Below are positions 39,790 to 43,757 of a stretch of 64,000 bases of DNA, piece by piece. The notes beneath the pieces were generated by a model. That model was not told the origin of the DNA, searched no databases, and saw only the letters and a program-made list of their open reading frames with translations. Every line of letters starts with the position of its first letter. Positions within the stretch are counted from its first letter, which is position 1. Made by a program: the position numbers and the translations under genes. The stretch lies in the sequence record PQ471516.1; one strand, 5' to 3'.

Positions 39790-39871
<82 letters not shown>

Positions 39872-39892: not shown

Positions 39893-40057
39893 ATGACGCA
39901 TGAAGAATGGATGAATGATATTAATTTTAGATATTCGGGTATCGGTAGTTGGCGAAAATATCATTGGGAAATTATATCAGACCCAGCAGAATACGATAAA
40001 CTTATAAACCATGAAGTATATCCGTGGTTCTTTATTGAAATAATGGTACGAATATGA
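39893..40057 (+). CDS. MTHEEW-family microprotein 8 (54 aa)
   Basis: MTHEEWMNDINFRYSGIGSW... Confidence 0.8.
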   Translation: MTHEEWMNDINFRYSGIGSWRKYHWEIISDPAEYDKLINHEVYPWFFIEIMVRI

Positions 40058-40218
40058 CGCATGAAGAATGGATGAATGATATTAATTTTAGATATTCGGG
40101 TTTCGGTAAATGGCTAAAGTATCATTGGGAATTTATTACTGATCCTCAAATGTACGATAAACTTATAAATGATCAAGCATATGAAATTTACTTATTTGAA
40201 ATACTGGTCAGAACATGA
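40054..40218 (+). CDS. MTHEEW-family microprotein 9 (54 aa)
   Basis: MTHEEWMNDINFRYSGFGKW...; ATGA coupled. Confidence 0.8.
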   Translation: MTHEEWMNDINFRYSGFGKWLKYHWEFITDPQMYDKLINDQAYEIYLFEILVRT

Positions 40219-40379
40219 CGCATGAAGAATGGATGAGAAAACAAAAGCTAACATGGAATCCTTATTGTTACCAGTTAGACCCAAGAATGTGGGATGTGAT
40301 ACGTATTAAATGTATGTACAAATCATTTCTTGGTGATATAATGGATGTTGAAGTACTGATGAATTTAGTACATCGATAA
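40215..40379 (+). CDS. MTHEEW-family microprotein 10 (54 aa)
   Basis: MTHEEWMRKQKLTW...; ATGA coupled. Confidence 0.8.
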   Translation: MTHEEWMRKQKLTWNPYCYQLDPRMWDVIRIKCMYKSFLGDIMDVEVLMNLVHR

Positions 40380-40409: not shown

Positions 40410-41043
<634 letters not shown>

Positions 41044-41049
41044 CAAATC

Positions 41050-41354
41050 GGGCCATTAGCTCACGGTGGTTAGAGCAAACGACTCATCGACAATGGTGAC
41101 TTTCATCAGTAATGGTGATTGAAAAACTGGATGAATTCAGGGAAATCTTAACACGTAATGGTGATGACAATCCTGAGCCAAGCCCAATAAGCGTATTGGG
41201 AAGGTGCAGAGACTAGATGGTACAGTACGTTCTTACTGTGTAATACATCATTAGCGTCCGGCATCCCTATGGGATGATGATATAGTCCGTACTATTGTGA
41301 AAACTATAGATTATACGAATCGTTAGGTACTGTGTTCGACTCACAGATGGCTCA
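41050..41354 (+). tRNA. trnI: intron-containing tRNA-Ile2(CAU): exons 41050-41087 and 41318-41354
   Basis: Spliced cloverleaf GGGCCAT/ATGGCTC, GCTC/GAGC, AACGA-CTCATAA-TCGTT, CTGTG-TTCGACT-CACAG; C4-G69 and C5-G68 as in Ile2. Confidence 0.9.
41088..41317 (+). mobile_element. group I self-splicing intron (230 nt, no ORF)
   Basis: P AATTCAGGGAAA, Q AATCCTGAGC, R GTGCAGAGACTAGA, S ATGATATAGTCC; P1 U-G at the 5' splice site; terminal G41317. Confidence 0.92.
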
Positions 41355-41373
41355 CAAACTTTGAAATAAAATA

Positions 41374-42078
41374 ATGAAAATAAAATTAGAATATCCATAC
41401 AGTAATGATTGGAAGAATGGGTATATACAGATAAACCCTGAAGGTAGAAGAACTGTAATACTTTATAATTCTCCAACTGATAGAAGCAGTACTCAATATG
41501 CTAGATATCTATTAGCAGTAAAAGAAGGTAGATATTTAACTGAGTCTGAAGAAGCAGACCACATTGATAATGATTTCACAAATGATGATTTGTCTAATTT
41601 ACAAATACTTCATGTTGATGAACATCGTTATAAAACACATAAGAATGGAGTACAAGCACGATATGATTCATTTGTATGTGCTTGTTGTAATACGGAATTT
41701 TCCCGTAGACATACTAAAGTGAAATCATATACAAAATATTGTAGTGTTGAGTGTTCACAAAAAATGGTCAAGCCTCCGTCAAATACAAAGGGTGGTGAAA
41801 CATCAGTTGATTATGAAAAGGTAAAAGAATATATTAACCAAGGTTTGTTAGATACTGAAATTGCTAAAATAATGAATATTAGCAAAGGTTCCGTACTAAA
41901 TTATAGAACCAAAAATAATATACCATCAAAACATTTTGAGAAAGTAAGGATATTAGAAGATAATATTACTGAGATCAGAAAACGTTTGACAGATGGTGAG
42001 AAGAAGGTTAAGATATATGAAAGTTATGGTGTTTCGAAGAATGTATTTGCTAGGTTTTTAAAACGCCATAATATGTAA
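41374..42078 (+). CDS. free-standing HNH homing endonuclease
   Basis: ADHIDNDFTNDDLSNLQIL..H; CxxC...YCSxxC zinc module; two C-terminal HTH-like repeats. Confidence 0.85.
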   Translation: MKIKLEYPYSNDWKNGYIQINPEGRRTVILYNSPTDRSSTQYARYLLAVKEGRYLTESEEADHIDNDFTNDDLSNLQILHVDEHRYKTHKNGVQARYDSFVCACCNTEFSRRHTKVKSYTKYCSVECSQKMVKPPSNTKGGETSVDYEKVKEYINQGLLDTEIAKIMNISKGSVLNYRTKNNIPSKHFEKVRILEDNITEIRKRLTDGEKKVKIYESYGVSKNVFARFLKRHNM

Positions 42079-42085
42079 TAAATAA

Positions 42086-42159
42086 GACTCTGTAGCACAA
42101 TTCGGTGGTGCGAACGACTGTTAATCGTTAGGTTGGGGATTCGAGTTCCTCCAGAGTCG
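42086..42159 (+). tRNA. trnN: tRNA-Asn(GUU)
   Basis: GACTCTG/CAGAGTC, AACGA-CTGTTAA-TCGTT, G73. Confidence 0.92.
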
Positions 42160-42165
42160 CAAATC

Positions 42166-42294
42166 ATTGGACACATTAATCTTCGATGGTAATGCTGGTT
42201 AATATCTTACGGCTGTAAAATGCAATACATTACATATTGCTTCAGGTACAGAGATATAAAGATTAATTAATAAGGTATCCTTATTTTGTCCAAT
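42166..42294 (+). ncRNA. putative pseudoknotted structured RNA
   Basis: Six perfect helices plus a 6-bp pseudoknot (see findings). Confidence 0.65.
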
Positions 42295-43600: not shown

Positions 43601-43673
43601 GCCTTCTTAACTCAGTTGGTAGAGTAATCGCCTTGTAAGCGATAAGTCATCCGTTCAAGTCGGATAGAGGGCA
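43601..43673 (+). tRNA. trnT: tRNA-Thr(UGU) copy 1
   Basis: GCCTTCT/AGAGGGC, ATCGC-CTTGTAA-GCGAT. Confidence 0.92.
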
Positions 43674-43675
43674 CA

Positions 43676-43757
<82 letters not shown>

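What the first reader, a model, noticed from the sequence alone, without database searches (positions are those of the whole stretch)
41374..42078. Free-standing HNH endonuclease beside the ORF-less tRNA intron: candidate collaborative homing pair
Seen: the HNH gene starts 20 nt after the interrupted tRNA and is bounded by tRNA-Asn; the intron itself has no ORF. Established: collaborative homing (an ORF-less intron protects the target of an adjacent free-standing nuclease) is known for cyanophage psbA, and T4 SegB spreads tRNA regions. Inference: this HNH cuts intron-less tRNA-Ile alleles of competing phages, and possibly the host Ile2 gene, while the intron gives self-immunity.
Basis: inference. 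Interest (0 to 1): 0.75.

Follow-up and report, generated by a model that had tools for sequence, protein, structure and literature searches.

The report
Homing nuclease beside intron-split phage tRNA
A free-standing HNH homing-endonuclease gene sits between an intron-split tRNA-Ile(CAU) gene and a tRNA-Asn gene in a jumbo coliphage; its family nearly always lives next to tRNA(CAU) genes, and here nuclease and intron are inherited as one block, but whether the intron shields the phage from its own nuclease is still untested.

Summary
The window is Escherichia phage Turkey5, a RaK2-like jumbo phage. A tRNA(CAU) gene (exons 41050-41087 and 41318-41357) is split by a 230-nt ORF-less group I intron (41088-41317). 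A 234-aa HNH gene starts 16 nt after the tRNA and ends 7 nt before tRNA-Asn.

The protein is an I-HmuI-like HNH nuclease with a four-cysteine cluster and two C-terminal HTH modules.

Relatives show four things:
- In 14 of 15 loci carrying relatives of at least 53% identity, a tRNA(CAU) gene lies within about 55 nt. In the fifteenth (L020), a tRNA(CAU)-like 3' fragment abuts the stop codon.
- Only the Turkey5 clade also has the intron.
- The same intron sits in four different tRNA(CAU) exon contexts, in genomes without this HNH.
- Fourteen close relatives have the empty site, with tRNA(CAU) abutting tRNA-Asn.

In the Escherichia phage lineage, intron, exon 2, HNH and a swapped tRNA-Asn allele form one co-inherited block. 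No HNH carrier keeps an uninterrupted native-type tRNA(CAU).

Best reading: a tRNA(CAU)-associated free-standing homing endonuclease that carries the intron along (trans homing). Strict collaborative homing, with the intron giving immunity, stays possible at about 0.25 and is unproven.

The parts
40772..40800 (+). sigma-70-like promoter (TTGACT-17-TATAAT) in front of tRNA-Ser(GCT); likely start of the transcript that runs through the tRNA(CAU)-HNH-tRNA-Asn block
   Evidence: 11 of 12 consensus matches, TG extension. Consensus match only; function inferred.
40807..40896 (+). tRNA-Ser(GCT), left neighbour. The block shared with TH47 and the metagenomic carriers starts here.
41050..41087 (+). exon 1 of tRNA(CAU), Ile2-like; ends with the anticodon CAT
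   Evidence: sequence. Junction fixed by the intron-less WPEC5 allele. The best E. coli matches of the spliced tRNA are annotated tRNA-Ile.
41088..41317 (+). ORF-less group I intron, 230 nt, inserted after anticodon position 36
   Evidence: Rfam RF00028 at 95.1 bits. The consensus fold has 66 pairs, 13 of them with compensatory changes; the U.G pair at the 5' splice site is invariant and the last base is G. No internal ORF.
41318..41357 (+). exon 2 of tRNA(CAU). Its T stem (CTGTG/CACAG) is that of the Klebsiella-phage intron carrier Muenster, not that of the intron-less Escherichia-phage alleles. CCA is not encoded.
41374..42078 (+). free-standing HNH homing endonuclease gene ('HNH-A'), 234 aa
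41374..41775 (+). nuclease half (aa 1-134). It holds the N-terminal beta-sheet, the HNH motif (D62-H63 ... N75 ... H84; nt 41557-41625) and the four-cysteine cluster C102/C105/C123/C127 (nt 41677-41754).
   Evidence: Invariant columns in 24-25 homologues. The AF2 model has strands 59-63 and 76-80 and helix 81-90. Best PDB fold match is I-HmuI, 1U3E. This half is 99.3% identical to TH47.
41812..42066 (+). C-terminal DNA-binding half: two helix-turn-helix modules (aa ~147-180 and ~186-231)
   Evidence: Weak Pfam HTH_7, HTH_17 and GerE hits. Relatives reach the HTH thresholds. AF2 predicts helices 147-231. Only about 84% identical to TH47, which puts a recombination breakpoint inside the gene.
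42086..42160 (+). tRNA-Asn(GTT), an allele of the RaK2 type (GCACAAT D arm) that differs from the allele found at empty sites. It marks the right edge of the shared block.
42123..42144 (+). repeat of the start of exon 2 (AATCGTTAGGT exact). Together with AACGACT upstream, it makes the tRNA-Asn anticodon arm a copy of the tRNA(CAU) arm except for the anticodon itself.
   Evidence: family D1; sequence

Best explanation
The ORF at 41374-42078 encodes an I-HmuI-like HNH homing endonuclease that is free-standing. Its family's home is the DNA right next to tRNA(CAU) genes of RaK2-like jumbo phages.

Proposed mechanism (inferred): when Turkey5 co-infects a cell with a relative that has the empty site (tRNA(CAU) abutting tRNA-Asn), the enzyme nicks or cuts the rival's tRNA(CAU)/tRNA-Asn region. 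Repair from the Turkey5 copy then converts the whole interval.

The ORF-less group I intron lies 57 nt upstream of the gene, inside that interval. It would therefore be copied along with exon 2, the HNH gene and the linked tRNA-Asn allele. This is trans homing of a non-autonomous intron, as with T4 MobE and the nrdB intron.

The intron may also break the enzyme's recognition site in Turkey5's own tRNA gene. That would make the pair a true collaborative-homing pair, but this is a possible extra, not shown.

Shown here: the gene's family and fold, its linkage to tRNA(CAU), the empty site, the block structure, and the intron's integrity and past mobility.
Inferred: nuclease activity, target, direction of conversion, and immunity.
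For: Protein:
- PHROG HNH family at E=1e-56.
- Invariant D62-H63, N75 and four Cys in 24-25 homologues.
- AF2 model at pLDDT 86.6, with I-HmuI as best PDB fold match at probability 1.0.
- Relatives reach Pfam HNH_3 and HTH thresholds.

Linkage to tRNA(CAU):
- Turkey5, TH47 and the L011/L012/L029 contigs, RaK2 (K64-1 gives identical matches), P0002 (L038), P0005, P0006, P0007, P0008, P0009, P0010, CBB and Yersinia fHe-Yen9-03 all have a tRNA(CAU) gene within about 55 nt.
- These tRNA genes belong to at least four unrelated sequence classes.
- In P0004 (L020) the stop codon abuts a tRNA(CAU)-like 3' fragment.

Patchy presence, as expected of a homing endonuclease gene:
- Fourteen Escherichia/Salmonella jumbo phage genomes have the empty site, with tRNA(CAU) separated from tRNA-Asn by a few nucleotides (4-7 nt where I read the sequence).
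- There is one copy per carrier genome.
- One carrier (L029) has the gene broken by a stop codon.

Block structure:
- Turkey5 is 98-99% identical to intron-less, HNH-less phages up to 41044, 41077 or 41087. Exon 2 then drops to 85-88%.
- The right flank from 42167 is 97% identical to JNE01, which has neither element.
- The block from tRNA-Ser to tRNA-Asn is shared at 94-95% with TH47, L011 and L029, which have different flanks.
- The exon 2 T stem matches the intron carrier Muenster rather than the intron-less alleles, a co-conversion signature.

Intron:
- Functional-looking, with compensatory changes.
- Present at 86-92% identity in four exon contexts, so it has moved.

Precedent: trans homing by MobE (PMC2790892); SegB in the T4 tRNA cluster, which cuts a tRNA-Asn gene (PMC2330249).
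Against: - No cleavage or cross data exist. Activity and target are inferred from context only.
- The carriers of the block in Escherichia phages may all descend from one or two events, so their perfect intron-HNH linkage has little statistical weight.
- There is no obvious Shine-Dalgarno sequence before the ATG, so expression may be low.
- Conserved adjacency to tRNA(CAU) could partly reflect vertical inheritance of a two-gene cassette rather than repeated targeting.
- More distant family members (under 50% identity) are not always next to tRNA(CAU). O18-011 is next to tRNA-Arg and PA11 has no tRNA nearby.
Confidence: 0.5

Rival explanations
1. Strict collaborative homing. The HNH recognises the uninterrupted anticodon arm of the native E-type tRNA(CAU) gene and cuts at or next to the intron insertion site. 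The intron splits that site in Turkey5 and so gives self-immunity, while the nuclease gives the ORF-less intron its mobility.
For: - The only feature shared by the very different tRNA genes found next to this HNH family, and absent from other tRNAs, is the CTCATAA anticodon loop. That is where the intron sits.
- No HNH carrier has an uninterrupted E-type allele. It is intron-split in Turkey5, TH47, L011, L012 and L029. It is replaced by a long-arm tRNA(CAU) in L038. Only a 3' fragment starting about 8 nt past the insertion site remains in L020.
- In the Escherichia/Salmonella lineage, no genome seen has the intron without the HNH.
- Seven intron-less relatives carry a replaced anticodon stem (CCCCCTCATAAGGGG), a polymorphism centred on the insertion site.
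- Precedent: F-CphI and the psbA intron (PMC6083498).
Against: - RaK2/K64-1, P0009 and P0008 carry the HNH next to uninterrupted tRNA(CAU) genes that keep the CGACTCAT|AATCG core. P0008's neighbour even keeps ACGACTCATAATCGTT.
- Muenster, KP13-7, RCIP0023, phiKp_21 and OU509535 have the intron but no copy of this HNH anywhere in the record.
- The closest structural relative, I-HmuI, is by my own recollection a nicking enzyme that also acts on intron-containing DNA. If this enzyme behaves the same way, immunity may not be needed.
- The cut site is unknown.
Confidence: 0.25
2. Independent neighbours. The HNH and the intron are two unrelated selfish elements that happen to sit in the same hot spot. 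The HNH targets something other than tRNA(CAU), such as the tRNA-Asn gene or the intergenic junction, or is no longer active. The intron spreads with other nucleases or by reverse splicing.
For: - The tRNA cluster is crowded with at least four unrelated HNH genes at this spot in different relatives. HNH-B lies after tRNA-Asn in Muenster and WPEC5. HNH-C lies after the intron-split tRNA in OU509535 and L031. HNH-D lies upstream in Turkey3, JNE01 and L030.
- The intron occurs with each of them, so no single partner is required.
- The tRNA-Asn allele is swapped together with the HNH in Turkey5, TH47 and RaK2.
- SegB's preferred site is in a tRNA-Asn gene.
- The HNH in L029 is broken while its intron is intact.
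Against: - tRNA-Asn follows the HNH in only 3 of about 10 lineages, whereas tRNA(CAU) is adjacent in nearly all.
- The Turkey5 ORF is full length with all invariant residues.
- The intron-HNH block is shared between genomes with different flanks.
Confidence: 0.2
3. Non-homing role. The nuclease mainly serves the phage, for example by stimulating recombination or amplification of the tRNA locus under host tRNA-targeting defence, or by degrading host DNA including the host tRNA-Ile2 gene, rather than acting as a selfish element.
For: - A 2026 paper reports that T-even SegB promotes segmental amplification of anti-defence tRNA loci (PMC13096335, abstract seen).
- The spliced phage tRNA shares the CGACTCATAATCG core with an E. 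coli tRNA-Ile(CAU) gene.
Against: - Absence from most close relatives, with intact empty sites, and decay in L029 fit a dispensable selfish gene, not a needed function.
- Nothing here bears on host DNA cleavage.
Confidence: 0.05

Closest known systems
F-CphI and the ORF-less psbA group I intron of cyanophage S-PM2 (collaborative homing; Zeng, Bonocora and Shub 2009, as described in PMC6083498)
   Same: A free-standing nuclease gene lies immediately downstream of a gene split by an ORF-less self-splicing group I intron in a large myovirus. Intron-less alleles exist in relatives. The core of this intron is about 75% identical to a cyanophage psbA intron (S-CBWM1).
   Different: - The nuclease family differs: HNH of the I-HmuI type here, Endo VII-like in F-CphI.
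- The host gene is a tRNA, not a protein gene.
- Cleavage at the insertion site and protection by the intron were shown for F-CphI and are untested here.
- Orthologues of this HNH commonly live beside intron-less copies of the target gene.
T4 MobE and the nrdB intron carrying defunct I-TevIII (trans homing; PMC2790892)
   Same: A free-standing HNH endonuclease next to a gene carrying a non-autonomous intron. The intron is mobilised as a passenger of the conversion tract, with no need for a cut at the insertion site. This fits the block structure seen here.
   Different: MobE activity and marker inheritance were measured; here they are inferred. The T4 intron still carries a dead ORF, whereas this intron has none.
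[quoted passage not shown]
   Same: Free-standing homing endonucleases sitting between tRNA genes. SegB cuts a tRNA gene (tRNA-Asn of T2L) and drives preferential inheritance of the surrounding tRNA region. The RefSeq note on the PA11 homologue calls it similar to T5 TflI.
   Different: SegB belongs to another nuclease family and recognises the common T-psi-C motif. The family here is tied to one anticodon class (CAU). No intron is involved in T4 or T5. T5 itself was not among the tblastn hits.
I-HmuI of Bacillus phage SPO1 (PDB 1U3E)
   Same: Best structural match of the AF2 model: an elongated HNH enzyme with an N-terminal beta-sheet, an HNH core and a C-terminal helix-turn-helix.
   Different: I-HmuI is intron-encoded in a DNA polymerase gene. 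Sequence identity is only 15% and the TM-score is low (0.27-0.35) because the domains are arranged differently. This protein has an extra four-cysteine cluster and two HTH modules.
Bacterial tRNA group I introns, especially the Azoarcus pre-tRNA-Ile(CAU) intron (PMC13168695; insertion position from my own knowledge)
   Same: An ORF-less group I intron in the anticodon loop of a tRNA-Ile(CAU), with a 5' exon ending in CAU.
   Different: By BLAST the nearest relatives of this intron are phage introns from Vibrio, Staphylococcus Twort-like phages and cyanophage psbA. No exact core match was found in 185,579 bacterial and archaeal genomes. It sits in a phage-encoded tRNA.

Membership tests
HNH (beta-beta-alpha-metal) endonucleases, HNH_3 / I-HmuI-like | HNH motif: conserved Asp-His, Asn, and a final His or Asn | tested here: met
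   D62, H63 and N75 are invariant in 24-25 homologues. Position 84 is His in most, and Asn in several shorter relatives (P0016, P0018, P0020, P0019, P0021, P0033, P0036, P0061).
HNH (beta-beta-alpha-metal) endonucleases, HNH_3 / I-HmuI-like | beta-beta-alpha fold around the motif | tested here: met
   The AF2 model (pLDDT 86.6) has strands 59-63 and 76-80 followed by helix 81-90. The top PDB match is I-HmuI, 1U3E (probability 1.0, E=4e-3).
HNH (beta-beta-alpha-metal) endonucleases, HNH_3 / I-HmuI-like | score above the curated Pfam threshold | tested here: inconclusive
   The query itself gives no Pfam HNH hit. Its full-length relative P0012 (42% identity) scores 30.8 against a cut-off of 24.8 for HNH_3, and many hits carry PF13392. 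PHROG 14913 matches at E=1e-56.
HNH (beta-beta-alpha-metal) endonucleases, HNH_3 / I-HmuI-like | metal-dependent DNA nicking or cleavage | not testable with these tools
   Needs purified protein.
Free-standing homing endonuclease gene | intergenic, not inside an intron or intein | tested here: met
   The ORF starts 57 nt after the end of the intron and 16 nt after the tRNA; it ends 7 nt before tRNA-Asn.
Free-standing homing endonuclease gene | present or absent among close relatives, with an intact empty site | tested here: met
   Fourteen genomes have tRNA(CAU) directly abutting tRNA-Asn (sequences). The flanks are 97-99% identical to Turkey5.
Free-standing homing endonuclease gene | flanking markers co-converted with the gene | tested here: met
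   Exon 2, the tRNA 3' end and the tRNA-Asn allele all differ from the empty-site alleles and travel with the HNH.
Free-standing homing endonuclease gene | cuts the allele that lacks it, near the insertion point | not testable with these tools
   Needs a cleavage assay on A4- or PBECO4-type DNA.
Collaborative homing pair (F-CphI type) | ORF-less self-splicing intron in the gene next to a free-standing nuclease gene | tested here: met
Collaborative homing pair (F-CphI type) | nuclease cuts the intron-less allele at the intron insertion site | not testable with these tools
   There are only indirect hints: the breakpoint in L020 about 8 nt 3' of the site and the anticodon-stem polymorphism.
Collaborative homing pair (F-CphI type) | intron prevents cutting of the carrier's own gene | not testable with these tools
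Collaborative homing pair (F-CphI type) | intron and nuclease co-occur across relatives | tested here: inconclusive
   Linkage is perfect on the E-type allele: 5 carrier loci against 14 empty genomes. But the HNH occurs without the intron in at least 9 lineages, and the intron occurs without this HNH in 3 other exon contexts.
Trans homing (MobE / nrdB intron type) | non-autonomous intron within recombination distance of an intact free-standing nuclease gene, inherited as a block | tested here: met
   The distance is 57 nt. The block 40784-42163 is shared at 94-95% between genomes with different flanks.
Trans homing (MobE / nrdB intron type) | intron inheritance depends on the nuclease in crosses | not testable with these tools
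   Needs phage crosses.
Group I intron | conserved catalytic core and helices, U.G at the 5' splice site, terminal G | tested here: met
   RF00028 at 95.1 bits. The U.G pair is invariant, P1 shows a C:G to G:C swap, and 13 of 66 pairs have compensatory changes. The last base is G in all copies.
Group I intron | self-splicing | not testable with these tools
   Needs in vitro transcription or RT-PCR.
tRNA-Ile2 (CAU, lysidine-modified) | sequence resembles known tRNA-Ile(CAU) rather than tRNA-Met | tested here: inconclusive
   The listed best E. coli matches of the spliced tRNA are annotated tRNA-Ile (79.7% over 63 nt). GenBank annotators call the intron-less alleles tRNA-Met. TilS determinants were not tested.

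The most novel reading that the evidence does not exclude
This HNH family would be a tRNA(CAU)-gene-specific homing endonuclease family that reads the anticodon arm. Carriers would then escape self-cutting in three alternative ways: splitting the arm with a group I intron (Turkey5 clade), replacing the tRNA with a divergent tRNA(CAU) (L038, RaK2), or truncating it (L020). On that reading the Turkey5 pair would be the first collaborative-homing pair in a tRNA gene. It would also sit in a coliphage with natural empty-site relatives, so the 'nuclease meets intron' step in the origin of mobile introns could be tested directly by crosses.
Probability: 0.25. Interest if true: 0.7.

Novelty: new member of a known kind. 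Interest (0 to 1): 0.55.

Why it matters
Mobile group I introns are thought to arise when a free-standing homing endonuclease and an ORF-less intron that share a target site come together. Only a few natural intermediates are known, notably cyanophage psbA with F-CphI and T4 nrdB with MobE.

This locus offers another, in a tRNA gene of an E. coli phage. Sequenced relatives show every state:
- empty site;
- nuclease only;
- intron only;
- both elements;
- nuclease decayed.

That makes the model testable with ordinary phage crosses and cleavage assays.

I also found no paper in the searchable literature that reports a group I intron in a tRNA gene of a RaK2-like jumbo phage. Annotation pipelines miss the split tRNA: it is absent from the GenBank records of Turkey5 and Muenster.

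The comparison further shows that the tRNA cluster of these jumbo phages is a mosaic of tRNA alleles exchanged together with nuclease genes.

Tried and rejected
Searches that led nowhere:
- Pfam on the query gave only sub-threshold HTH hits and no HNH model. The family assignment rests on PHROGs, relatives, invariant residues and fold.
- A sequence search of the PDB gave nothing meaningful.
- IMG/VR scans for the protein and for an intron core motif found nothing.
- A scan of 185,579 bacterial and archaeal genomes for the intron core found no exact match. That is a narrow, exact-match test and does not rule out a host origin.
I re-ran it without that row.
- T5 TflI kinship: T5 did not appear in the tblastn hits. 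I cite only the RefSeq annotator's note on PA11.

Ideas considered and rejected:
- The HNH was once intron-encoded, or sits inside a tRNA intron in L020. Rfam finds no intron there even at E up to 1, and only a tRNA 3' fragment abuts the stop codon.
- tRNA-Asn is the consistent partner of the HNH. It follows the gene in only 3 of about 10 lineages.
- The Rfam intron coordinates (40996-41309) give the boundaries. The generic model mis-anchors P1/P2 upstream, so I took the boundaries from the exon comparison instead.
Full report
**Identity of the window.** The region 40800-42200 is 100% identical to Escherichia phage Turkey5 (PQ471516.1, 351 kb). Turkey5 is a RaK2/PBECO4-like jumbo myovirus of the Asteriusvirus group. 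The GenBank record annotates the ORF as 'HNH homing endonuclease' and lists tRNA-Ser and tRNA-Asn. It does not annotate the split tRNA or the intron.

**Checking the observation.**
- ARAGORN finds seven tRNAs in the window. They include tRNA-Ser(GCT) at 40807-40896 and tRNA-Asn(GTT) at 42086-42160, with nothing called between them.
- Rfam finds one group I intron in the whole window, at 95.1 bits against a gathering score of 50.
- The generic model mis-places the 5' end, so I took the boundaries from the exons.
- GGGCCATTAGCTCACGGTGGTTAGAGCAAACGACTCAT (41050-41087) and AATCGTTAGGTACTGTGTTCGACTCACAGATGGCTCA (41318-41357) join into a normal cloverleaf with anticodon CAT.
- The uninterrupted allele of phage WPEC5 reads ...GACTCAT|AATCGTT... 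at exactly this junction.
- The intron is 41088-41317, 230 nt, ends in G and holds no ORF.
- The HNH ORF (41374-42078, 234 aa) starts 16 nt after the discriminator base and stops 7 nt before tRNA-Asn.

**The protein.**
- PHROG 14913 (HNH endonuclease) matches residues 1-149 at E=1e-56. Pfam gives only weak C-terminal HTH hits.
- A search of 5.8 billion proteins returns 83 relatives. Ten are full-length (53-91% identity). Many shorter ones carry only the nuclease half and have Pfam HNH_3 on record.
- In an alignment of 24-25 of them, D62-H63, N75 and four cysteines (C102, C105, C123, C127) are invariant. The last motif position is His in most and Asn in several shorter relatives.
- An AlphaFold2 model (pLDDT 86.6) shows an N-terminal sheet, a beta-beta-alpha unit at 59-90, a small cysteine-cluster domain and two three-helix modules.
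- Its best PDB match is the HNH homing endonuclease I-HmuI, at probability 1.0 and E=4e-3.
- This is a credible, intact, modular HNH homing endonuclease. Activity itself is not shown.

**The intron.**
- Eight copies were collected: Turkey5, TH47, two metagenomic Escherichia-phage contigs, Klebsiella phages Muenster and OU509535, and contigs L030 and L031.
- They are 86-100% identical. The consensus fold has 66 pairs, 13 of them with compensatory changes. The U.G pair at the 5' splice site is invariant, and the adjoining P1 pair shows a C:G to G:C swap.
- The intron sits after CAT in four different tRNA(CAU) genes, with acceptor stems GGGCCAT, GGCCCCT, GGGACTG and GGCCCCG. All share only CGACTCAT|AATCG around the site.
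- The exons differ far more than the intron does, so the intron has moved between genes. Having no ORF, it needs help in trans or reverse splicing.
- Its nearest relatives by BLAST are phage introns from Vibrio, Staphylococcus Twort-like phages and a cyanophage psbA intron.
- The listed best E. coli matches of the spliced tRNA are annotated tRNA-Ile(CAU).

**Where the HNH family lives.** I looked at the DNA around every relative of at least 53% identity that I could reach.
- Turkey5, TH47 and the contigs L011, L012 and L029: intron-split tRNA(CAU) upstream.
- RaK2 (K64-1 gives identical matches): intron-less tRNA(CAU) 20 nt upstream.
- L038 (P0002), L013 (P0005) and L014 (P0006): a tRNA(CAU) with a long variable arm upstream.
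- L022 (P0009) and L023 (P0010): intron-less tRNA(CAU) upstream.
- L017 (P0008) and L021 (P0007): tRNA(CAU) 5-8 nt downstream.
- The nuclease-only forms in Pectobacterium phage CBB and Yersinia phage fHe-Yen9-03: tRNA(CAU) upstream.
- L020 (P0004): the stop codon is followed directly by the 3' part of a tRNA(CAU)-like gene that begins at the variable loop.
- Sources.
- tRNA-Asn follows the gene in only three lineages.
- Relatives under 50% identity are less consistent. O18-011 is next to tRNA-Arg, PA11 has no tRNA nearby, and Bestia lies between tRNA-Thr and tRNA-Met.
- So the closer clade is specifically tied to tRNA(CAU) genes of several unrelated sequence classes. That fits a nuclease whose home, and probably target, is that gene.

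**Empty sites and block structure.**
- Fourteen Escherichia and Salmonella jumbo phage genomes carry tRNA(CAU) separated from tRNA-Asn by a few nucleotides (4-7 nt where I read the sequence), with neither intron nor this HNH.
- On the left, Turkey5 is 98-99% identical to such phages up to 41044 (Turkey3, JNE01), 41077 (vB_Ec-M-J) or exactly the insertion site at 41087 (WPEC5).
- Exon 2 then drops to 85-88%. It lacks an encoded CCA, and its T stem (CTGTG/CACAG) is that of the Klebsiella-phage intron carrier Muenster, not the CGGTG/CACCG of every intron-less E-type allele.
- On the right, similarity to an HNH-less phage (JNE01, 97%) resumes at 42167, just after tRNA-Asn. That tRNA-Asn is itself a different allele, of the RaK2 type.
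- The stretch from tRNA-Ser to tRNA-Asn is shared at 94-95% with TH47, L011 and L029, whose outer flanks differ from Turkey5's.
- Intron, exon 2, HNH and tRNA-Asn thus behave as one block of about 1.1 kb, with conversion-tract-like edges.
- Within the block, Turkey5 and TH47 are 99% identical through the nuclease half of the gene. They are only about 84% identical in the HTH half and 88% in tRNA-Asn, so there is a breakpoint inside the gene.
- In L029 the gene is cut in two by a stop codon between the halves, while the intron is identical to TH47's. This is the expected decay of a homing endonuclease gene.

**Does the intron protect the carrier?**

Points for:
- The only thing the many HNH-linked tRNAs share, and other tRNAs lack, is the CAU anticodon loop, which the intron splits.
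- No HNH carrier has an uninterrupted E-type allele. It is split in the Turkey5 clade, replaced in L038 and truncated about 8 nt past the insertion site in L020.
- Seven intron-less relatives have a swapped anticodon stem centred on the site.

Points against:
- RaK2/K64-1, P0009 and P0008 keep the CGACTCAT|AATCG core uninterrupted beside their own HNH.
- Muenster, KP13-7, RCIP0023, phiKp_21 and OU509535 have the intron but no copy of this HNH in the record.
- The intron is found next to three other, unrelated HNH genes (HNH-B, HNH-C and HNH-D).
- The Escherichia-phage carriers may stem from very few events.

The data cannot decide between the two. They show that the pairing is not a general rule of the family. 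They leave intron-based immunity open for the Turkey5 enzyme, whose DNA-binding half is only 56-69% conserved in the counter-examples.

**Mechanism I consider most likely.**
- The gene is a free-standing HNH homing endonuclease, probably read from the tRNA transcript. An 11/12 sigma-70-like promoter lies at 40772-40800, and the ATG has no clear ribosome-binding site.
- In mixed infections it would nick or cut the tRNA(CAU)/tRNA-Asn interval of empty-site relatives. Repair would then copy the block, with the intron carried as a passenger.
- This is the trans-homing scheme shown for T4 MobE and the nrdB intron. There the cut need not be at the insertion site, only within recombination distance (PMC2790892).
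- Collaborative homing in the strict F-CphI sense (PMC6083498) is a special case that needs the cut at position 36/37 and protection by the intron.
- T4 SegB shows that nucleases in phage tRNA clusters do cut tRNA genes and drive inheritance of the region (PMC2330249).

**Novelty and verdict.**
- The HNH gene alone is ordinary and already annotated.
- The pair is a new, untested example of a known kind of arrangement, in a new type of host gene.
- Searches of the paper library found no report of a group I intron in a tRNA gene of RaK2-like phages.
- The value of the locus lies in the unusually complete set of natural states in E. coli and Klebsiella phages. Interest is moderate to good (0.55).

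Noticed in passing
window 41078-41087 + 41318-41328 versus 42113-42133: In Turkey5 the anticodon arm of tRNA-Asn (AACGACTgttAATCGTTAGGT) copies the arm of the split tRNA(CAU) (AACGACTcat|AATCGTTAGGT) except for the anticodon. The HNH gene is therefore flanked by an 11-nt exact direct repeat. TH47, RaK2 and A4 do not show this. It may be gene conversion between the two tRNA genes.
   Followed up: partly
window 41776-42160: There is a recombination breakpoint inside the HNH gene. Against TH47, the nuclease half is 99.3% identical, but the HTH half is 84.5% and tRNA-Asn 87.8%. This suggests the DNA-binding module and the tRNA-Asn allele were swapped together.
   Followed up: partly
window 39893-40379: Three tandem 54-aa paralogous ORFs (MTHEEWM...), each exactly 165 nt, with start codons overlapping the previous stop (ATGA). 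Relatives have two to three copies. Function unknown.
   Followed up: no
window 39790-39868: A weak tRNA-like match (33.3 bits, gathering score 29) lies directly after tRNA-Ser(TGA) and is not called by ARAGORN. It may be a degenerate or unusual tRNA.
   Followed up: no
window 43601-43754: Two tandem tRNA-Thr(TGT) genes lie 6 nt apart and have different sequences. Some relatives have only one.
   Followed up: no
L013 2894-2980, L014 2862-2953, L038 453-539: tRNA genes with anticodon CAT and a long variable arm (87-92 nt, class II-like) sit beside HNH-A orthologues. A long-arm tRNA reading AUG/AUA is unusual, and its amino-acid identity is unknown.
   Followed up: no
L009 2398-2474, L008 ~2400-2480, L023 ~825-900: The tRNA(CAU) genes beside the HNH in CBB, Yersinia phage fHe-Yen9-03 and contig L023 have an odd D arm and a T loop reading GGGTTAGACTCCC. 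ARAGORN misses two of the three.
   Followed up: no
L028 2251-2329 (vB_Ec-M-J); also six other Escherichia phages (H14-H19): An otherwise E-type intron-less tRNA(CAU) has its anticodon stem replaced (CCCCCTCATAAGGGG instead of ACGACTCATAATCGT). The polymorphism is centred on the intron insertion site.
   Followed up: partly
L029 5379-6083 (minus strand): A metagenomic Escherichia-phage contig (OEQX01000005.1) has the HNH gene split by a stop codon between the nuclease and HTH halves, while the neighbouring intron is intact.
   Followed up: yes
L020 1212-1960: The stop codon of an HNH-A orthologue (65% identity) abuts the 3' part of a tRNA(CAU)-like gene that starts at the variable loop. Upstream lies a 99-nt aberrant tRNA-like sequence. 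This may be a footprint of illegitimate insertion.
   Followed up: partly
L010 3313-3738; L030 1847-2371; L002 3492-4034: Three other HNH genes occupy the same hot spot in relatives. HNH-C (HNH_3) lies right after the intron-split tRNA in OU509535. HNH-D (NUMOD4 + HNH_3) lies upstream in L030, Turkey3 and JNE01. HNH-B (weak, sub-threshold HNH and NUMOD3 hits; annotated as FelixO1-like in Muenster) lies after an 84-nt tRNA-Asn in WPEC5 and Muenster.
   Followed up: partly
window 40772-40800; L003 2825-2850: tRNA genes in this cluster are preceded by a conserved promoter-like box, TTGAC(T/A)-N-GTTCAGTACTGA-TA(T/C)A(A/T)T, shared between Escherichia and Klebsiella phages.
   Followed up: no
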